64,000 nt of DNA from Setoptus koraiensis. Its lineage: Eukaryota > Animalia > Arthropoda. The notes beneath the pieces were generated by a model that saw nothing but the letters and a program-made list of their open reading frames with translations, searched no databases and was not told the origin of the DNA. The DNA is taken from positions 15,190,001 through 15,254,000 of the forward strand of contig CM106585.1 in NCBI GenBank assembly GCA_048013815.1. Direction: 5' to 3'. The position numbers were made by a program, and so were the translations under genes. Shown here in pieces: positions 16,790 through 25,341 of the stretch; the stretch's first letter is position 1, and the number at the start of each line of letters is the position of its first letter.

Positions 16790-16962
16790 TCATGCTGTGA
16801 GAGACAATGTGAGATCAATATTCACCACCACTGGCGAGCGCCATAGCACCAAAGCAGCCTTAATCAATAGGAGGTCCAAGTTCGAAATAACAATACTCGG
16901 ATGCCCTACAGTAACTGACGGTCGTCATGCTGAGGTAGAATTTGTCCAAGTTCGGAAAACAG
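16790..16962 (+). pseudogene. TRNT1: Decayed partial duplicate of the 3' end of TRNT1 exon 1 with intact 5' splice site
   Basis: 16801-16962 is about 83-84% identical to both intact copies (26-27 mismatches in 162 nt). It has no in-frame ATG, and conserved residues are changed (RCD to GCP, HG to HS, W to R). Donor CAG|GTAAGT at 16963 is retained. Confidence 0.85.
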
Positions 16963-17007
16963 GTAAGTTTATGCGCCACATTAGATTCAATTAAAATCCT
17001 ATTACTT

Positions 17008-17125
17008 GCTATCTATGATGAGATACAGATGACGAGACTGAAGCGTCTTCGTTAGGCCAGAGATACTTGATATCCTGCCTAACAGACCATGTGAAGTTAA
17101 ATACGAGGCATTTGACTGAGATAGC
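17008..17125 (+). ncRNA. SNORD15: Box C/D snoRNA, SNORD15/U15-like, copy 1
   Basis: Terminal stem GCTATC/GATAGC, box C ATGATGA (17015-17021), D' CTGA, box D CTGA (17116-17119). Guides AGATGACGAG and ACGAGGCATTTG are antisense to the conserved LSU rRNA sequence CCAAAUGCCUCGUCAUCU. Two differences from copies 2 and 3. Confidence 0.88.
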
Positions 17126-17257
17126 TACAATCAAATCTATTATTCTCTTGATTACAGCCCAAGCATCTATTCTAACCAACTAATTATGTTCTAATATTTG
17201 CCACATCCATCAGACTTAACGTATATTTTAAACGTAAAATATGATCTTTCGTTAGTG

Positions 17258-19023
17258 ATGAGGAAAATGTTTCAGCCAAATCTAGTCGCTTGTATGAAAC
17301 GCGTGGCCAATCATCTTTGGGACAACAATGGAGTCTTGCGCAGGGTCAAGTTTCTAGAACTTCGAGAATTACCCATCAAAGTGAGATCATCGGTAGCTTG
17401 TCTTTCATCCTATAATAATTCAGCATCACCTTTGCCATCTGAGAGGTCAGCGTTATTCAAGAAACTGGTCGACAATGATGAGGTCAACTTTATCAAGGAC
17501 TTGTACCTAGGAGCTGGTTACGAAATTCGTATTGCGGGTGGTGCCGTCAGAGATTTGCTATCCGGCAAGCTCCCCCACGATATAGATTTCGCCTCCACGG
17601 CCACTCCGGATGAATCGAAGGCTCTACTTCATGGTCGAGACAATGTGAGATTAATATTCACCGCGGCTGGCGAGCGCCATGGCACTATAGGAGCTTTGAT
17701 CAACAGAAAGTCCAAGTTCGAAATTACCACACTAAGATGCGATACTGTAACTGACGGCCGTCATGCTGAGGTGGAATTTGTCAAAAATTGGAAAACAGGT
17801 AAGTTTTGACGCGCATAGAACCCCCTTACTTGCTATCGATGATGAGATACAGATGACGAGACTGAAGCGTCTTCGTTAGGCCAGAGATACTTGATATCCT
17901 GCCCAACAGACCATGTGAAGTTAAATACGAGGCATTTGACTGAGATAGCTACAATCAAATCTACTATCCTATTAATGACAACCTTGAGAACTTATCTAAC
18001 TGAATATTTTCAAATTTCTCTCAATTATTCAATACCATCAATCACGCAGATGCTGAGCGACGCGACCTCACATTCAACGCTATGTTCTTAACGCTGGATG
18101 GTGAACTAGTAGACTTTTTTGGTGGTGCAAACGATCTTGCAAGTGGCAGAGTTCGGTTTGTAGGTGACCCCAATAAGAGAATTGAAGAGGACTATCTTAG
18201 AATTCTGAGATTCTTTAGATTCTGGTCTAGATATGGTCGTGGTAGACCAGACGATGAGACTCTACAGGTTTTGCGCGACCACATATCTAGAAAGGGCCTA
18301 GATAACATAAGTGGTGAACGGATCTGGTCAGAGTTGAAGAGGATATTTGAGCACGTGCCTTTTGTCAATGTGGTAGAATTGATGCTTGAACTCAAGTTGT
18401 TCTACAAGCTAGGAGTTCACGACTTAGATACAAGCGCCGGTTGTGAATTGAATCAATTAGATACTGAGAATTACGCTAAATATTGTGCTGTGGTTATGGA
18501 AGACTTGAAGGCAGTGCAATTACGATTGCAAGACTTAGCTCTCAGAAGCATGCCTAATAAGGCTGATTCTCTCTTTGAATCTGTCGTCCCGTTTGCAACA
18601 CTAATCCGATCTCACAAACAACTAGCCAACGCACATGCACGCATGAAATGGTCAAACTTTGACAGAGACTTTATCGCCTACGTTCTGACCCACCGAGACC
18701 GTAGAATGGATCTTCAAGATTACAAAGTACATCTTGCTCTTGAACCAAAATCTAAAAGGGATATCATATTGAAACAAATGTTAGAATATCTGAAGTACTG
18801 TGGGCAGGTTGAGCTTGTTGGTGAGCTCGCGGACTGGCCCATACCAGAATTTCCTGTCGATATTCGGGCTGTCATCGATGCGATACCTACTCCAAAGCGT
18901 AATGTTAATGTTAAGGTTTTACATGCTGATCTGAAGCGTGAGTGGGCCAAGAGTGGGTTTAGCTTGACCCATTCAGATTTGATGAGAATGCTAGAAGAGA
19001 AAATTCAAAATATTAGACGATAA
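17258..19023 (+). CDS. TRNT1: CCA tRNA nucleotidyltransferase copy A (chimeric: mRpS6-derived N-terminus), exons 17258-17798 and 18050-19023; about 504 aa
   Basis: Class II motifs GGAVRD...DIDF, TTLRCD-loop-DGRHAEVEF, DAERRDLTFNAM and EEDYLRILRFFRF. A 251-nt phase-1 intron (GTAAGT...CGCAG) rebuilds KT-D-AERRD. First in-frame ATG is 17258; the ORF-track start at 17198 is TTG. The start assignment is less certain than the gene identity. Confidence 0.92.
17832..17949 (+). ncRNA. SNORD15: Box C/D snoRNA, SNORD15/U15-like, copy 2 (intron of TRNT1-A)
   Basis: Stem GCTATC/GATAGC, box C 17839-17845, box D 17940-17943. By the D+5 rule the targets are the LSU residues equivalent to yeast Gm2288 (D' guide) and Am2281 (D guide). 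Confidence 0.92.
17832..18862 (+). repeat. Left arm of a 1031-bp near-perfect inverted repeat (partner 22409-23439)
   Basis: Same length as the partner. Only 2 mismatches were seen in the parts compared (one intronic, one Ala/Thr codon), and the alternate-frame ORFs in the track are essentially identical. Confidence 0.9.
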
Positions 19024-19051
19024 ACTACTTGTGATATTTTTAATAAAACAA

Positions 19052-20405
19052 TTATGCATTTTGCAGCAAAATTTTCACTCTCTGTTTACAAATATTCAAG
19101 GCTTCATCTACATTTGTCTGCAAAATGTGAACCCCATTGGTGACAAGTATCACCAAGTCCATCATGAGATCTCCAGTTACGTCCAAGGGGGCGATCGAAT
19201 ATATAGGGTAATTTAGTTCATGCACTCGAGACAGAACGTATTGTCTTTGGGGACAGTCATACTTGTATATCAAGAGCTCCTGGCCATAAGTTCCAATCAT
19301 TATTTCATTGTATCCGTCGAAGTCCATGTCACTGATACACGAGGTAGTACAGCAATCAACACGTTGACTTCTTGGCAACTCCCTCGGACAACTCAATCCA
19401 GTCTGAATGATATCTTCAAAGATGAGACTTGCCTCGGTGGAGCTTGTTACAAGTAAGTTGATTGGTTCACAACCATCGAGCGAATCTATTTTATCTTTGA
19501 TGTCAGAAAACTTGGAAGCAGAGCCTTGTTGAGATCTGAATTTTGTTGTCATCAATCGTACTGATGGCACAATTGTTGTGTATTCATCATATATCCACTT
19601 CTGCAATAATTCATATTTGGAATTTTCCTTATCCAGTCTCGTGTAACTTAGGATAACTGTACCGCTCTCCAAACTGACCACAGTTAGTCTAACAAATTCG
19701 TCATCTTTTCTAAAAGATTTACTGTCTATCCATAAGGCGATGCTAGTGAGACCCCCAAATTCAGGAAAGTTGTCGTTTATCGATGTCTCTACAAAGCATT
19801 GATTTGATTTGTCCTCTTGAAACAAATGTATGCACCTGTCACCGCCACTAAGTAACCACACTGTGTCAAGCTCAATATCTGATCCTTCTGCTCGTGATAA
19901 AATCAATTCAGTGTGATATAGGTGATAGGGGACATAACTTATAGATATTGTCTGACAACCCTGGGCTATGTAATCGAGATCAAATTCGCTTGATAACGAA
20001 CCGCTCGCGTAAATATTGAAGTAGAATGTCTGATTCTTCTCACTTGAATCAATGTTGCTTGGTAAGTTATTTGCTGATGTGAGCGAGTGGGTGATTCCTA
20101 TGACAAAATCGTTGCGTCGATTCAATCTTTTAAACGCATCTATCGAAACGATTTTCGCTCCGCCTGAGAAATGATCCAGAAATGAGCCGTTAGATGAGAT
20201 ATCGAAGTGGCAAAGTTTAGACATAATTAATGTATTTGAATCACTTACTAGGAATATAGGTGAATTCAATCTCTCTGGCTTGGGCTCGGAATTTATTATA
20301 ATCAATACAAAATACTTGGCAATCGTGAGTAGCTACTAAGACTTTGCTATTTCCTTCATCAAAATCAAGAGATGTCATTCCATAAATGTTACTTTCGATA
20401 GTCAT
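19052..20405 (-). CDS. KPTN: Kaptin (KICSTOR subunit), exons 20405-20249 and 20163-19052; about 422 aa
   Basis: MTIESNIYG...REIEFTYIP|SGAKIVSIDAF...FNIY...DLDYIAQGC...LLSGGDRCIHLF...DMDFDGYNEIMIGTYGQELLIYKY...DVTGDLMMDLVIL matches KPTN. 85-nt GTAAGT...CTCAG phase-1 intron. The ORF-track start (TTG, 20305) is a frame artefact. Confidence 0.92.
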
Positions 20406-20546
20406 TGGAAAGAAGTTAAGATCACTGAATCTATTGAATAGGTTTCACATTAAATAAGAACAGAATAGGTAGAATGGCTACATTAGTTTACATCCGAGTT
20501 GCCTATTGAAGCTTGTTGGATAATTGAAGAATTAAAAACAGAAACA

Positions 20547-21570
20547 CTATTCTGGATCGGGTTGCTGATACATCTTCTTAGCCGGGATGGTTAATAGGTT
20601 TTTAGTTCTTGGGCCTTTTAGGAAGACACCGGTTAGTCTGTCACCGTAGACACAACCTATAAGAGGAAAGGATTAGATAAGGAAATCGTCTCAGAATAAA
20701 ATAATCTTGATATCTTGTTATGTGTTATAGTTTTTATGCATTCTATGCTATTGAATTCTTACCAGTATCGATACCCATGGCGAACTCGTATTCCTGGAAT
20801 CTTCGCTTTGCGTCATGACCGTAGTATACGAAGTAAGGCCCCTTCCAGAATCTGGACCAAGGTCCCTGGCCTATTCTAGGATCGGCTGTAGGTTTATAAC
20901 AGATCTCTTTGGTACTTTCATTTTCAATTATCTCGAGATTTCTTAACCTGATCATCTGATCTAGCGGAGTTACTTTTAGATAGTCTGCAACGGGCACAAA
21001 ACCAGCATGAACTACGATACTTTTCAAGGAAGGCATAGTTATGGTAAACGGTAGATTTCTAAGAAAATCAACATCGCTATCATCTAAGTTGGCAATCCAT
21101 TCATTGCCTTTCCTTGTCTCTTTTCCTTCTTTCATCTTGTCGTACTCGCGAACGACGGTATCATCGTGGTTACCCTTGACAGCTATAGTAGACAGGCTCC
21201 ATTTATCTCTCACCGAGCGAATCACTTCTCTACTGAGAGGTCCTTTATTCACAAGATCTCCAACGAGTAACTTAAGTAGCTTGTTGGGATCTCTGCTGTT
21301 TGATGTAGTGTGTGCTTTGTTCACAAGCTCTTCATACTCCTCGCAACAGCCATGAATATCGCCGATGACAAGAACTTCATCAAAATTATCTAAATATTCT
21401 TCATCTAGATTGACGTGATGGTCTCTAAAAGTTTCAATCCTTGATCTCTTTTCTGTGGTTTCAGTTTGTTTATCTCTCAAGCATTGAGACAGACCTTCTA
21501 CTAACCTCTTGCTAGCTGACTGAGCCATGGTTCCGATGGGCTGAGTTATCTTCGTTAGGCAGATTCTCAT
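20547..21570 (-). CDS. ApaH-like metallophosphoesterase (symmetrical bis(5'-nucleosyl)-tetraphosphatase / ALPH family), exons 21570-20763 and 20656-20547; 305 aa
   Basis: Motifs GDIHGC, GDLVNKGP, KGNHD, VHAG and YGH. GIDTG|CVYG is rebuilt across a 106-nt GTAAGA...TATAG intron. Confidence 0.88.
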
Positions 21571-22247
21571 TAAATCAAGTGGAAGTTCCAGACGATTCTC
21601 ACTTTTTATTAGTGGTAGGTGTTACTTCTGTCGACCGATATCAACCCCAATGAAATACTGGGAGTGTAATTAGAGTTAGAATATTTGGCATCAGGTAAGA
21701 GAAATATTAATCGATGATTGAGGTTTATTATCTATTCGTCTTTAGGGAGGTCAAGCCGACGAATCTCCGTATTATATACCATCCCGTGCAGATAGAAATA
21801 TGTTTTCGTATAGAATATGTCCTGACCTTTTTTGAATGTCAATCCTTCACCATTAGATAGAAAATTTGAATATCTTTTGCTTGTCGCCAACGCAGATAAT
21901 TCGTAGGTTTTAATCTCGACCATCATGTTGCGATCAGTAGTGGGGAAGATTATGAATGTGACGCTGACTTTTCGCGCACCGTCCGCAGCATGTAAACAAA
22001 TATTTTTGCAGTGTCACGCCGTACACTCAGAATTCTATCAAGTAACGCCAATAGGCGCTTCTGGCTTCCCTAAGGCTTCTGGGATCATTAAACACGTCTT
22101 TTCAGTTTTTTCAATAAAGGCCACATAATAAGATTCATCGATCAGGAACACATAGCAGAAAATGCAAATACTACAAGTATTTAATGATTCAACAAATTTG
22201 GACAAACTGTGCTTAAAAAGATTGCATCTAAACTTTAATAGAAATTA

Positions 22248-23881
22248 TCACATGTGGTGCTTCATATTCTCAACTTTCTCTTCGAGCAACCTTATCAGGT
22301 CTAAAGATGTCATCGTGAAACCGCCATTGGCCCAGTCACGCTTGAGGTCGGCTAGGAGGATTTGAATATTCTGTTTTGGAGGGGGTATTTTATTGACGAT
22401 AGCTTTGGTATCGACAGGAAATTCTGGTATGGGCCAGTCCGTGAGCTCACCAACAAGCTCAACCTGCCCACAGTACTTCAGATATTCTAACATTTGTTTC
22501 AATATGATATCCCTTTTAGATTTTGGTTCAAGAGCAAGATGTACTTTGTAATCTTGAAGATCCATTCTACGGTCTCGGTGGGTCAGAACGTAGGCGATAA
22601 AGTCTCTGTCAAAGTTTGACCATTTCATGCGTGCATGTGCGTTGGCTAGTTGTTTGTGAGATCGGATTAGTGTTGCAAACGGGACGACAGATTCAAAGAG
22701 AGAATCAGCCTTATTAGGCATGCTTCTGAGAGCTAAGTCTTGCAATCGTAATTGCACTGCCTTCAAGTCTTCCATAACCACAGCACAATATTTAGCGTAA
22801 TTCTCAGTATCTAATTGATTCAATTCACAACCGGCGCTTGTATCTAAGTCGTGAACTCCTAGCTTGTAGAACAACTTGAGTTCAAGCATCAATTCTACCA
22901 CATTGACAAAAGGCACGTGCTCAAATATCCTCTTCAACTCTGACCAGATCCGTTCACCACTTATGTTATCTAGGCCCTTTCTAGATATGTGGTCGCGCAA
23001 AACCTGTAGAGTCTCATCGTCTGGTCTACCACGACCATATCTAGACCAGAATCTAAAGAATCTCAGAATTCTAAGATAGTCCTCTTCAATTCTCTTATTG
23101 GGGTCACCTACAAACCGAACTCTGCCACTTGCAAGATCGTTTGCACCACCAAAAAAGTCTACTAGTTCACCATCCAGCGTTAAGAACATAGCGTTGAATG
23201 TGAGGTCGCGTCGCTCAGCATCTGCGTGATTGATGGTATTGAATAATTGAGAGAAATTTGAAAATATTCAGTTAGATAAGTTCTCAAGGTTGTCATTAAT
23301 AGGATAATAGATTTGATTGTAGCTATCTCAGTCAAATGCCTCGTATTTAACTTCACATGGTCTGTTGGGCAGGATATCAAGTATCTCTGGCCTAACGAAG
23401 ACGCTTCAGTCTCGTCATCTGTATCTCATCATCGATAGCGTGTGAAAAGGTTTTGTACGCGCCAAGACTTACCTGTTTTCCAATCTTTGACAAATTCTAC
23501 CTCAGCATGACGGCCGTCAGTTACAGTATCGCATCTGAGAGTGGTTATTTCAAATTGTGACCTCCTGTTGATCAAAGCTGTTACGGTGCCATGGCGCTCG
23601 CCAGCCGCGGTGAATATTAATCTCACATTGTCTCGACCATGAAGTAGAGCCTTCGATTCATCCGGAGTGGCCGTGGAGGCGAAATCTATATCGTGGGGAA
23701 GCTTGCCGGATAGCAAATCTCTGACGGCACCACCCGCAATACGAATTTCGTAACCAGCTCCCTGGTACAAATTCTTGATGAAATTGACTTCATCATTTTC
23801 TACCAGTTTCTTGAATAACGCTAACCTTTCGGGTGGCAAAGGCGATCTCGCTGAATCTTTATCGGAAAAAAGACACGCCAT
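22248..23881 (-). CDS. TRNT1: CCA tRNA nucleotidyltransferase copy B (parental), exons 23881-23473 and 23221-22248; 460 aa
   Basis: Same class II motifs as copy A and a 251-nt phase-1 intron. An in-frame TAG lies 13 codons upstream of ATG 23881, so there is no longer N-terminus without an extra exon. Confidence 0.93.
22409..23439 (-). repeat. Right arm of the 1031-bp inverted repeat (partner 17832-18862)
   Basis: Reverse complement of the left arm. Confidence 0.9.
23322..23439 (-). ncRNA. SNORD15: Box C/D snoRNA, SNORD15/U15-like, copy 3 (intron of TRNT1-B)
   Basis: Identical to copy 2 on the minus strand; box C at 23432-23426, box D at 23331-23328. Confidence 0.92.
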
Positions 23882-24168: not shown

Positions 24169-24585
24169 TTACCTCCTCAAGGAAGTGACAACATTCTTGT
24201 GTTCGAGCAACGGTTTAACGCTAGGTCTGTATGAAGGTGGAAGAAGTTCCTCCTCCAGAGTACACTCATAATCATCGCTGATTTTGTTCTCTTCTTTCTT
24301 GTAGAATTGATCTCGAACTACATCGACGTCCAGCTCAAATGTATCCTTGAGCCTCTTTAATTTTTCCGGTCCAATTTCCACATGATAGATGAAATAGTTT
24401 CCTACCTTGAATGGTTTTCCAGGCACCGGTGATCTCACTTTGATTGGTAAATCTTGAAGTCCTAGAAACTCGATCCTGCGCAAGACTCCGTTGTTGTCCC
24501 ATAGATGATTGGCCACGCGTTTCATACAAGCGACTAGATTTGGCTGAGACATTTTCCTCAACACCAACAAAAGATCATATTTCAT
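24169..24585 (-). CDS. mRpS6: Mitochondrial ribosomal protein S6 (bS6m), 138 aa, intronless
   Basis: MKYDLLLVLRKM...GVLRRIEFLGLQDLP...GNYF...LDVDVVR...ECTLEEELLPPSYRPSV matches arthropod mRpS6 (CTLHEEMLPPAYR-type C-terminal motif). Confidence 0.92.
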   Translation of the reverse strand: MKYDLLLVLRKMSQPNLVACMKRVANHLWDNNGVLRRIEFLGLQDLPIKVRSPVPGKPFKVGNYFIYHVEIGPEKLKRLKDTFELDVDVVRDQFYKKEENKISDDYECTLEEELLPPSYRPSVKPLLEHKNVVTSLRR

Positions 24586-25341
24586 GTTTGAAATATACGT
24601 TAAGTCTGATGGTTGTGGCGGTTGGCAGATGAAAAATTGATGATGATGATATTTATGAATATTATCGAGCTTTCAGGTCAATACTGTGTGGTTTGTGTTC
24701 CAGAATGTAAACTTGTTTTGATCCTACTAGCACTAGTGAATATTGTGTAACAACAACATTACATTGATGATACCTCATTGACCATGTTGAACAGAATTTT
24801 TTCTTTGTAAACCGAAACAAAATGTGCAATATTCATGTTGCCTCCATAGTGAAAGGAGCGAAAACTTGAGCGGGTTTCGTCCGCCAGGGCCGTTTTCAGT
24901 TGCAATTGGCGCAACTGCAATGATTCGTGTCGCTCTGGCGGACAAAAATGAGTTCAGATGTTCTCATAACTATCCCGTCTAACAAATGTGAAGCCATGGC
25001 TATAATACAATACAAACATTGGCACACTGTTCAACCTTCGTTCAGATATCTGTTCCCCCAAAGTGTAATCTGTGCAGTCGTTGTTGCGCAGTACTACGTT
25101 GGCATTATGCTTAAAATCCCAGAGCCGAAGCCCTGAGTAGCATAATATTCATCTTGGTACTTGGCTTTAAGTACTGTTACTATTAATATTATTACCATCA
25201 TTATTATTACATGTATTACTATTATTATTATCACCATAAATCTACTATTACGTCAATATCAACTGCCTAGGGTTGTTAAAGCCTTTGGCCATACTACCAT
25301 CAGTAACTGTCTATTTATAACCGAGTGCGCTCATACCTCAG

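What the first reader, a model, noticed from the sequence alone, without database searches (positions are those of the whole stretch)
17258..23881. Two full CCA enzymes with identical core but diverged tail and beta-turn patch: possible specialisation for truncated mitochondrial tRNAs
Seen: exon 2 proteins are identical except one A/T change until ...PEFPVD. The last about 53 aa then diverge strongly (A: IRAVIDAIPTPKRNVNVKVLHADLKREWAKSGFSLTHSDLMRMLEEKIQNIRR; B: TKAIVNKIPPPKQNIQILLADLKRDWANGGFTMTSLDLIRLLEEKVENMKHHM), yet both stay in frame and reach the same length. A second divergent patch follows GERH (HGTIGALINRKSKF vs HGTVTALINRRSQF). Known: the class II tail domain contacts the tRNA elbow, and many acariform mites have mt-tRNAs lacking D or T arms. 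Inference: the tails may be tuned to different tRNA substrates and so escape homogenisation.
Basis: partly seen in the sequence, partly recalled or inferred. Interest (0 to 1): 0.75.

Follow-up and report, generated by a model that had tools for sequence, protein, structure and literature searches.

The report
Two mite CCA-enzyme genes, shared core
A plant-mite-like genome carries two mirror-image genes for the enzyme that puts CCA on tRNA ends; copying between them keeps the middle identical, while the tRNA-elbow-binding tail and the N-terminal leader stay different, which suggests, but does not prove, one enzyme for mitochondria and one for the cytosol.

Summary
Two intact, two-exon class II CCA-adding enzyme (TRNT1) genes lie in inverted orientation: A at 17258-19023 (+) and B at 23881-22248 (-).

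A 1,031-bp tract (17832-18862) differs at only 2 bases. It includes 218 nt of intron with a SNORD15-like snoRNA and 270 codons without a single synonymous change. That is gene conversion, not purifying selection.

The last 53 codons are only 47% identical. Synonymous sites there are saturated (pS 0.71) and dN/dS is about 0.14. The tail is therefore an old stratum, constrained in both copies, and shows no accelerated protein evolution.

The tail is the three-helix module matching human TRNT1 helices a19-a21. These carry all published T-loop/elbow contacts; A and B differ at 6 of the 7 aligned contact positions.

The "beta-turn patch" is a 146-bp unconverted island. It has only 5 mostly conservative residue changes and also spans intron sequence. 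The beta-turn tip itself is identical in both copies.

A has a 93-residue leader taken from the neighbouring MRPS6 gene and has lost B's start codon. B has only the short form. An RNA-like assembly shows A's exon 1 spliced to exon 2.

A mitochondrial/cytosolic split is plausible (about 0.5). Tail tuning to truncated mt-tRNAs is unproven (about 0.3). Notes from this scan already cover overlapping aspects of this stretch.

The parts
17258..17798 (+). [quoted passage not shown]
   Evidence: Open frame 17198-17809. Pfam PolyA_pol E 2e-15. The donor at 17798|17799 is used in RNA-like contig X7.
17200..17394 (+). Copy of the 5' end of the MRPS6 gene, fused in frame to A. The original MRPS6 ATG is mutated, and the first in-frame ATG is at 17258.
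   Evidence: 91% identical to 24425-24619. dS 0.16, dN/dS 0.49. The real MRPS6 gene has Pfam Ribosomal_S6.
17510..17685 (+). Conversion tract 2 (B partner 23586-23761): 176 nt with one mismatch. It encodes motif A and the beta-turn tip.
   Evidence: dS 0.023, dN 0.
17686..17831 (+).
   Evidence: About 83% identity; dS 0.48, dN 0.07, dN/dS 0.15. The first 32 intron nt compared (17799-17830) are 69% identical.
17799..18049 (+). Gene A intron (GT-AG), hosting a SNORD15-like C/D snoRNA at 17834-17948
   Evidence: Joint 17798->exon 2 in X7. Rfam RF00067, E 0.0016, below the gathering score.
17832..18862 (+). Conversion tract 1 (B partner 22409-23439): 1,031 nt with 2 differences (17964, 18829)
   Evidence: 270 codons have 0 synonymous and 1 non-synonymous change.
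18050..19023 (+). Gene A exon 2: motifs B-E, neck, body and tail, plus the stop codon
   Evidence: Pfam PolyA_pol and PolyA_pol_RNAbd. AF2 pLDDT 90. Foldseek 4x4w/8cbm_E at E 1e-13.
18862..19023 (+). A tail: 53 codons plus stop; helices at exon-2 residues 271-277, 287-300 and 307-322; net charge +5
22248..22409 (-). B tail: 53 codons plus stop; helices at 271-275, 283-298 and 305-322; net charge +2
22248..23221 (-). Gene B exon 2
23222..23472 (-). Gene B intron, with the snoRNA copy at 23323-23437
23473..23881 (-). Gene B exon 1. The ATG is at 23881, giving a short N-terminus of 49 residues before GGAVRD.
24169..24585 (-). Intact MRPS6 gene directly upstream of B. It is the source of A's leader.
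   Evidence: Pfam Ribosomal_S6 E 1e-11. MRPS6 also lies about 0.8 kb from the CCA gene, beyond TMEM70, in the closest relative's contig L001.
16801..17185 (+). Third partial copy (F3): 3' half of exon 1 with conserved residues lost, a donor site, and the intron start with a nearly intact snoRNA copy (17010-17124)
   Evidence: It is equidistant from A and B (dS 0.59/0.58).
19024..22247 (.). Single-copy spacer between the tails, carrying minus-strand genes (a 417-aa ORF gene and a metallophosphoesterase)
   Evidence: DNA contig 18833-22438 with no differences.

Best explanation
This is an old inverted duplication of the single animal CCA-adding enzyme gene (TRNT1). Both copies have been kept functional.

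Shown:
- Gene conversion between the arms repeatedly overwrites the middle of the gene. The latest event is a 1,031-bp tract, next to an older or patchily repaired 176-bp tract. As a result the catalytic head (part), neck, body, the first half of the tail domain and the intronic snoRNA are letter-identical.
- The last 53 codons have not been exchanged for a very long time and evolve under purifying selection in both copies. They form the three-helix module that, in human TRNT1, touches the T-loop/elbow.
- The copies also differ at the other end. A lost the ancestral start codon in a ~540-bp deletion that fused the first ~52 codons of a copied MRPS6 gene in frame to it. A can therefore only be made with a 93-residue, presequence-like leader. 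B encodes only the short form, which in relatives starts at the internal Met.

Inferred:
- The ancestral dual-start gene has been split into a mitochondrial enzyme (A) and a nuclear/cytosolic enzyme (B).
- Each tail then faces only one tRNA pool: truncated mt-tRNAs or canonical tRNAs. The tail differences are therefore at least tolerated and possibly adaptive. A is more basic at the RNA-facing positions.
- The tail escapes conversion mainly for mechanical reasons. It lies at the edge of the homology and is now too diverged to recombine. Selection against tail-swapping conversions may add to that.
For: Conversion:
- There are 0 synonymous changes in 270 codons, the intron is identical at 217/219 positions after its first 32 nt, and the boundaries are sharp.
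- The run-length permutation test gives p < 2e-4.

Divergence strata:
- dS is 0 (core), 0.02 (tract 2), 0.16 (MRPS6 piece), 0.5-0.7 (exon 1 flanks) and saturated (tail).
- Tail versus the other unconverted parts: Fisher p = 0.0065 for synonymous and 9e-5 for non-synonymous differences. dN/dS is 0.14-0.18 in all of them.

Both copies intact:
- Motifs A, B, D and E are present, with Pfam hits.
- AF2 gives pLDDT 90 for both exon-2 products, with the same three tail helices. Foldseek finds human TRNT1 at E 1e-13.

Tail mapping:
- Alignment to 4x4w has a constant +26 offset that reproduces the named residues G390/H391/R394/G401/K402/G405/L408.

Duplication is lineage-specific:
- A and B share a 3-residue deletion and the loss of the Gly kept by 71/75 orthologs.

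N-termini:
- B has 49 residues before GGAVRD, the same as the short forms of orthologs, with its first acidic residue at position 7.
- A has 93 residues with no acidic residue in the first 21 and no internal Met.

Expression:
- The RNA-like contig in run X7 carries A's patch letters, is spliced 17798|exon 2, and runs 313 nt further 5'.

Reality of the locus:
- Independent DNA contigs cover both tails.

Charge:
- Tail charge is +5 for A and +2 for B, and the patch is +2 more basic in A. This is the direction of the known nematode adaptations (PMC7730189, PMC12013499).
Against: - No localisation or activity data exist.
- The presequence call rests on simple composition measures only.
- B's exon 1 and both tails were not seen in the one RNA-like run. 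Contigs drop variants, so this is uninformative, but B's expression remains unshown.
- The closest relative (P0001, contig L001) has only a short-form, MRPS6-linked gene on its contig. A short form may therefore serve both compartments in this clade.
- Residue differences between the tails are mostly conservative and roughly symmetric (15 vs 11 positions closer to the ortholog profile). B is only mildly more derived.
- The charge asymmetry is not significant (7 vs 2 changes).
- The 1-kb inverted repeats could invert the spacer and swap tails between the two 5' halves. The N-terminus/tail pairing seen in this assembly is not phased by any read evidence.
Confidence: 0.55

Rival explanations
1. 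The mosaic is purely mechanical and there is no division of labour. The two enzymes are interchangeable. The tails differ only because the end of a duplicated unit is rarely converted, and once diverged it cannot be. The duplicate persists through conversion, dosage or chance. A's MRPS6 leader is an accident that still allows function.
For: - dN/dS is the same in the tail and in the other unconverted parts, and divergence is elevated at synonymous sites too.
- Homology ends about 25 nt past the stop codon.
- The patch island contains intron and silent differences.
- Residue changes are conservative and nearly symmetric.
- An earlier scan note, not tested here, describes another palindromic gene pair in this genome with a conversion-resistant island (s1-367050).
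- Dictyostelium keeps two CCA enzymes without a compartment or substrate split (PMC7432833).
Against: - Both tails have been under purifying selection through saturation of silent sites, so both copies were needed for a long time.
- The N-termini differ in exactly the way expected for long versus short isoforms, and A cannot make the short form.
- A and B differ at 6 of the 7 positions aligned to the human T-loop/elbow contacts.
Confidence: 0.3
2. Only one copy is a working gene. The other, most likely B because it was not seen in the RNA-like run, is silent or dying and looks intact only because conversion keeps refreshing its core.
For: - In X7, only A's exon 1 letters are present at the patch.
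- No contig covers 23400-23599.
Against: - The unconverted B tail and B exon 1 flanks show dN/dS 0.14-0.18 with no stop codon or frameshift.
- B keeps its ATG, splice sites and a confidently folded tail.
- The X7 contig ends exactly one base before the A/B difference at 18829, as expected if both variants are present in that RNA.
- Logan contigs pop bubbles, so absence of one variant means little.
Confidence: 0.1
3. Assembly artefact: haplotypes or a collapsed/mis-joined repeat create a false second copy.
For: Near-perfect 1-kb inverted repeats are hard to assemble. No single contig from the other runs spans a whole arm together with both of its unique flanks.
Against: - Contigs from separate studies carry both tails on one 3.6-kb piece (18833-22438, no differences), and core plus A tail on another (17832-20848).
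- The two copies have different flanks: intact MRPS6 versus an MRPS6 fragment plus F3.
- Divergence is structured by codon position.
Confidence: 0.03

Closest known systems
Human TRNT1 (class II CCA-adding enzyme; PDB 4X4W, 8CBM)
   Same: Same fold and motifs. The exon-2 model matches at Foldseek E 1e-13, and exon 1 aligns at E 3e-27. The tail helices a19-a21 align, including the conserved W..P.FP and LK..W anchors.
   Different: Human has one gene that serves both compartments through two start codons. Here there are two genes with different leaders and different a19-a21 modules. Both mite tails have lost the Gly390 equivalent and have a shorter a19-a20 loop than other mites.
Nematode CCA-adding enzymes adapted to armless mt-tRNAs (Romanomermis beta-turn lysines, PMC7730189; Ascaris basic C-terminal extension, PMC12013499)
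   Same: [quoted passage not shown] A is more basic than B in both regions.
   Different: The nematodes adapt a single enzyme. Here the beta-turn tip (positions 74/75) is identical in both copies and not basic, and neither copy has a C-terminal extension. The differences lie inside a19-a21 and in positions 82-90.
Nematode mitochondrial EF-Tu1/EF-Tu2 paralogues (PMC1636415, PMC4013460)
   Same: They are a precedent for duplicating a tRNA-binding factor and specialising the copies for differently truncated tRNAs.
   Different: Both EF-Tu copies are mitochondrial and their specialisation is shown biochemically. Here the proposed split is mitochondria versus cytosol and is untested.
Dictyostelium discoideum CCA1/CCA2 (PMC7432833)
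   Same: Two complete CCA-adding enzymes in one eukaryote.
   Different: In Dictyostelium the duplication is old, the two enzymes are not separated by compartment or substrate, and the core is not homogenised.
Concerted evolution of inverted (palindromic) gene pairs by gene conversion
   Same: Arm-to-arm identity includes intron and silent sites, the tract boundaries are sharp, and the strata have different ages.
   Different: Nothing differs in the mechanism. What is particular here is that the unconverted ends are the two functionally addressable ends of the protein: targeting leader and tRNA-elbow module.

Membership tests
Class II CCA-adding enzyme / TRNT1 | Nucleotidyltransferase head domain with motif A (GGxVRD...DxD) | tested here: met
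   Pfam PF01743 at E 1e-15 to 2e-15 on both exon 1 products. GGAVRD...DID is present in both.
Class II CCA-adding enzyme / TRNT1 | Motif B (RRD), motif D (EDxxR) and motif E, as needed for templated CTP/ATP choice | tested here: met
   AERRDLT, EDYLRILR and ISGERIW are present in both exon 2 products and identical between them. They align to human TRNT1.
Class II CCA-adding enzyme / TRNT1 | Basic/acidic motif and flexible loop of full length, which marks a CCA-adding rather than a CC-adding enzyme | tested here: met
   The stretch from TDGRHAEVEF to DAERRD is the same length as in human. A has N where over 90% of orthologs have D in the 'DW' pair. The effect of that change is unknown.
Class II CCA-adding enzyme / TRNT1 | All-helical neck, body and tail fold | tested here: met
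   AF2 pLDDT 90.2 (A) and 89.8 (B). Top Foldseek hits are 4x4w and 8cbm_E, aligned over 313-318 columns.
Class II CCA-adding enzyme / TRNT1 | CCA-adding activity on tRNA | not testable with these tools
   Needs recombinant enzyme assays.
Gene-conversion (concerted evolution) tract | Identity extends to silent sites and non-coding sequence and ends abruptly | tested here: met
   0/175 synonymous sites differ in the core and the intron is 217/219 identical. Identity is about 63-75% in the 60-nt windows just past 18862.
Gene-conversion (concerted evolution) tract | Tract longer than expected from the overall mismatch density | tested here: met
   The longest identical run is 864 nt; the permutation maximum was 205 in 5,000 runs.
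Compartment-split paralogues (mitochondrial vs cytosolic isoform genes) | One copy has an N-terminal targeting leader and the other lacks it | tested here: inconclusive
   A has a 93-residue MRPS6-derived leader, basic, with its first acidic residue at position 22. B has a 49-residue N-terminus like the short isoforms of orthologs. No targeting predictor or experiment was available.
Compartment-split paralogues (mitochondrial vs cytosolic isoform genes) | Both copies expressed | tested here: inconclusive
   A's exon 1 is seen spliced in RNA-like run X7. B-specific parts and both tails are not seen.
Armless-tRNA-adapted CCA enzyme (nematode type) | Extra basic residues at the beta-turn tip (positions 74/75), or a basic C-terminal extension | tested here: not met
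   The tip reads FTAAGERHGT in both copies, with no K or R at 74/75. Both proteins end within about 5 residues of the last helix.

The most novel reading that the evidence does not exclude
An animal has split the normally single, dual-targeted TRNT1 into two genes. One is a mitochondrial enzyme whose import leader was captured from the neighbouring MRPS6 gene. The other is a nuclear/cytosolic enzyme. Gene conversion keeps one common catalytic core, while each copy keeps its own tRNA-elbow module, fitted to truncated mt-tRNAs or to canonical tRNAs. That would be a natural tail-swap chimera pair. Because the tails sit inside a spacer flanked by 1-kb inverted repeats, inversion of the spacer could even exchange them.
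Probability: 0.3. Interest if true: 0.75.

Novelty: new variant of a known kind. Interest (0 to 1): 0.55.

Why it matters
How tRNA-processing enzymes cope with mt-tRNAs that lack D- or T-arms is an active question. So far it has been answered only for nematodes, and only by laboratory domain swaps.

This locus offers two natural enzymes with an identical catalytic core. They differ essentially in the 53-residue T-loop/elbow module, in 5 residues of the beta-turn region, and in the N-terminal leader. Expressing A, B and the reciprocal tail swaps would test directly what the tail contributes to recognising truncated tRNAs in a mite.

The locus is also a clean example of conversion homogenising the middle of a gene while both functional ends stay apart. 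It adds a further case in this genome of a mitochondrial leader borrowed from a ribosomal-protein gene.

If the enzymes turn out to be equivalent, the locus remains an ordinary, well-resolved case of concerted evolution.

Tried and rejected
Searches that gave nothing useful:
- Close relatives for branch-wise dN/dS. The protein search gave at best 43% identity, with Aceria tosichella at 40%.
- The metagenome scan returned only distant loci.
- Exact look-ups of both exon-2 ORFs found nothing on record. Sliding dN/dS across relatives was therefore impossible.
- The run search listed no holder on record as RNA.
- Two loose-end sequences from X7 next to the intron (17956, 18039) do not occur in the window.

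Ideas considered and rejected:
- Positive selection on the tail: dN/dS is 0.14.
- One tail being a foreign acquisition: A and B share derived indels against 75 orthologs.
- Strongly asymmetric evolution: 15 vs 11 positions. There is only a mild excess of derived states in B (436 vs 339; 9 vs 1 against P0001).
- The beta-turn tip as a point of difference: it lies inside the identical tract.
- Assembly artefact: see the rival explanations.

Step left out:
All work was done exon by exon.
Full report
**What is there**

The window holds two complete genes for a class II CCA-adding enzyme in inverted orientation.
- Gene A (+) has exon 1 ending at 17798, a GT-AG intron at 17799-18049, and exon 2 at 18050-19023.
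- Gene B (-) starts at ATG 23881. Exon 1 runs to 23473, the intron is 23472-23222, and exon 2 is 23221-22248.
- Pfam finds the PolyA_pol head domain split over the two exons, and the PolyA_pol_RNAbd domain in exon 2 of both genes.
- Motifs A (GGAVRD...DID), B (RRD), D (EDYLR) and E are present.
- Both exons align to human TRNT1 structures: E 3e-27 for exon 1 and E 2.5e-34 for exon 2.

All searches and folds were done exon by exon.

- Exon-2 products are identical except for Ala/Thr at 18829/22442, up to ...PEFPVD.
- The last 53 residues are then 25/53 identical. A 2-residue indel is balanced by a 2-residue longer end in B.
- The patch after GERH differs at 5 of 38 codons.
- Longest identical run: 864 nt, against a maximum of 205 in 5,000 permutations of the 101 mismatches.
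- DNA contigs from other public runs reproduce the structure. One contig covers 18833-22438 (A tail, spacer, B tail) without a difference. Another covers 17832-20848, linking intron and core to the A tail.

**Why the core is identical**

The identical tract is 17832-18862 (1,031 nt, 2 differences).
- It includes 218 nt of intron, which is 217/219 identical after the intron's first 32 nt.
- It includes 270 codons with no synonymous change at about 175 synonymous sites.
- Purifying selection cannot produce that pattern. Gene conversion between the inverted arms can.
- A second tract, 17510-17685, has one (synonymous) mismatch.
- Between the two tracts lies a 146-nt island (17686-17831) at about 83% identity. 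It covers the end of exon 1 and the first 33 nt of the intron.
- The island could reflect two separate events, or patchy repair within one event.

**The unconverted parts form strata (Nei-Gojobori)**

| Segment | dS | dN | dN/dS |
|---|---|---|---|
| MRPS6-derived piece | 0.16 | 0.077 | 0.49 |
| Exon 1 5' part | 0.67 | 0.118 | 0.18 |
| Island | 0.48 | 0.07 | 0.15 |
| Tail | saturated (pS 0.71) | 0.32 | about 0.14 |

- The tail is significantly more diverged than the other unconverted coding parts. Fisher p is 0.0065 at synonymous sites and 9e-5 at non-synonymous sites.
- The ratio is the same, so the tail is older, not faster at the protein level.
- Both tails have been under purifying selection for as long as silent sites took to saturate.
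- Both copies share derived states against 75 orthologs. These are a 3-residue deletion in the a19-a20 loop, and loss of the Gly that 71 of 75 orthologs keep after FPV(S/D).
- The duplication is therefore specific to this lineage.
- Polarising with orthologs shows near symmetry: 15 vs 11 positions closer to the ortholog profile. B has a mild excess of derived states (436 vs 339 summed; 9 vs 1 against the closest relative P0001).

**What the tail is**

- AF2 models of both exon-2 products are confident (pLDDT 90.2 and 89.8).
- In both, the 53 residues form three terminal helices: A 271-277, 287-300 and 307-322; B 271-275, 283-298 and 305-322.
- The conversion boundary falls at residue 270/271, the start of the first of these helices.
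- Foldseek's best matches are human TRNT1 in apo form (4x4w) and bound to a mitochondrial pre-tRNA (8cbm_E).
- The alignment to 4x4w, with a constant offset of 26, reproduces the residues named in a 2026 preprint as contacting tRNA. These are G390 and H391 (a19) and G401, K402, G405 and L408 (a20). R394 touches TRMT10C.
- Meynier et al. [quoted passage not shown]
- At the aligned positions, A/B read I/T, R/K, I/V, K/K, R/Q, K/Q and H/L.
The diverged segment is the C-terminal 55% of the tail domain, and it holds all the reported tail-domain contacts with the T-loop and elbow.
- The first part of the tail domain, including the R354 equivalent, lies in the identical core.

**The patch**

- Hennig et al. 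2020 define the beta-turn region as human residues 61-91. The critical basic residues sit at 74/75.
- Against the human sequence, the tip lies in the converted tract. It is identical in A and B and has no basic residue at 74/75.
- The patch corresponds to positions 82-90 and the start of the flexible loop.
- A reads RKSK where B reads RRSQ. Most arthropods have an acidic D/E-K-E-N type sequence there.
- A also has N where over 90% of orthologs have D in 'DW'.
- These are few and mild differences, with dN/dS 0.15 and many silent and intronic differences around them. The island looks like unconverted sequence rather than a protected functional patch.

**The other end of the protein**

- Directly upstream of B lies an intact MRPS6 gene (24585-24169; Pfam Ribosomal_S6).
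- A carries a copy of its first ~52 codons (17200-17394, 91% identical) fused in frame to the CCA reading frame.
- Compared with B, about 540 bp are missing, from MRPS6 codon ~53 to the A of B's ATG. B's start codon therefore does not exist in A.
- The copied MRPS6 ATG is also mutated. The first in-frame ATG is at 17258.
- A has 93 residues before GGAVRD. There is no acidic residue in the first 21, there are 8 K/R in the first 40, and there is no internal Met.
- B has 49 residues, with acidic residues from position 7.
- Mite orthologs fall into the same two classes. Long forms have 65-91 residues, a Ser/Thr/Arg-rich start and an internal Met. Short forms have 49 residues and start at that Met.
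- The simplest reading is that the ancestral two-start gene has been divided: A makes only a long form and B only the short one.
- The closest relative's contig (L001) has an intronless short-form CCA gene with TMEM70 and then MRPS6 next to it. The CCA-MRPS6 linkage is therefore ancestral and B is the parental locus.
- That relative shows no long form on its 5.9-kb contig. This weakens the argument that a short form cannot serve mitochondria.

**Expression**

- No listed holder is on record as RNA.
- Run X7 nevertheless behaves as RNA. Its contigs skip three GT-AG introns.
- One 1,291-nt contig carries A's letters at all 13 patch positions, joins 17798 to the start of exon 2, and continues 313 nt beyond 17600. 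If collinear, that reaches the MRPS6-derived piece.
- That contig stops one base before the A/B difference at 18829. This hints that both variants are present.
- Neither tail and no B exon 1 appear in that run. Contigs drop variants, so nothing can be concluded about B.

**Reading**

- I take conversion (about 0.95) and long-term function of both copies (about 0.8) as established.
- The mitochondria/cytosol split is likely but unproven (about 0.5).
- Adaptive tuning of the tails is possible (about 0.3).
- A's unconverted parts are more basic: tail +5 vs +2 and patch +2. That is the direction of the nematode adaptations (PMC7730189, PMC12013499). The asymmetry is not significant (7 vs 2 charge changes).
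- Escape from homogenisation needs no selection. Homology ends about 25 nt after the stop codons, next to a convergent neighbour gene, and about 65% identity is a poor substrate for recombination.
- All 27 acariform mites examined, including two eriophyoids, have truncated mt-tRNAs (PMC4702108). This species' own mitogenome could not be reached.

**Caveat on linkage**

- The tails lie on the spacer side of the 1-kb inverted repeats. Recombination between the arms would invert the spacer and exchange the tails between the two 5' halves.
- No read evidence here phases leader and tail.
- X5's contig combines B's letter at 17964 with A's letter at 18829. This may reflect ongoing exchange or assembly path mixing.

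**Earlier scan notes**

- Notes on this same stretch describe the MRPS6 chimera, the 1,031-bp repeat and the snoRNA. I re-derived each of these here.
- Notes from elsewhere in this genome describe another borrowed ribosomal-protein leader and another palindrome with a conversion-resistant island. They fit both the leader-capture reading and the mechanical reading of the mosaic. They were not tested here.

Noticed in passing
window 17834-17948 (+), 23323-23437 (-), 17010-17124 (+): There are three copies of a C/D box snoRNA resembling SNORD15 (Rfam RF00067, about 30 bits, E 0.002, below the gathering score). Both guide/box D regions match and there is a terminal stem. Two copies sit in the CCA gene introns and one in the partial copy F3. 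The F3 copy differs at only 2 bases although its flanks are 12-16% diverged.
   Followed up: partly
window 16801-17185 (+): A third, partial copy (F3) lies directly upstream of A's MRPS6 piece. It comprises the 3' half of exon 1, a splice donor, and the intron start with the snoRNA. It is open in frame but has lost conserved residues (HGT to HST, LRCD to LGCP, W to R). It is equidistant from A and B (dS about 0.58). It may be a relic of an older 5' end of A, or a snoRNA-carrying pseudo-exon.
   Followed up: partly
proteins P0001-P0038, aligned to window 17686-17720: The nearest mite orthologs, including Aceria tosichella, carry a 29-51-residue Lys-rich insertion (consensus start VAVKFKE..DFKRIKL, end PEYDEESP). 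It sits exactly between HGT and FEITT, inside the beta-turn region. Other arthropods and both copies here have 10 residues at this place. It could be an acariform adaptation to truncated tRNAs. I did not find it described in the papers I read.
   Followed up: no
window 20163-20247 and 20431-21505 (-): RNA-like contigs of run X7 skip these two GT-AG introns on the minus strand. The second joins sequence upstream of 21506, inside the start of the metallophosphoesterase ORF (20743-21570), to the gene with the 417-aa ORF (19052-20305). The two genes may therefore share a first exon or overlap.
   Followed up: no
window 17956 and 18039: In run X7, one contig follows the intron up to 17956 and then continues for 255 nt of unrelated sequence. 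Another arrives at 18039 from 239 nt of unrelated sequence. Neither flank occurs in the window. This suggests another intron variant or a further copy in that sample.
   Followed up: partly
window 19023-19052: Gene A and the convergent minus-strand gene (stop at 19052) have stop codons only 28 nt apart, so their 3' UTRs must overlap. The homology between A and B ends in this interval.
   Followed up: no
L001 1797-4410: On the closest relative's metagenome contig the CCA gene is intronless, so it hosts no snoRNA. It is followed by TMEM70 and by MRPS6 on the opposite strand. Its CCA ORF has an in-frame stop 22 codons upstream of the ATG, so it is a short form only.
   Followed up: partly
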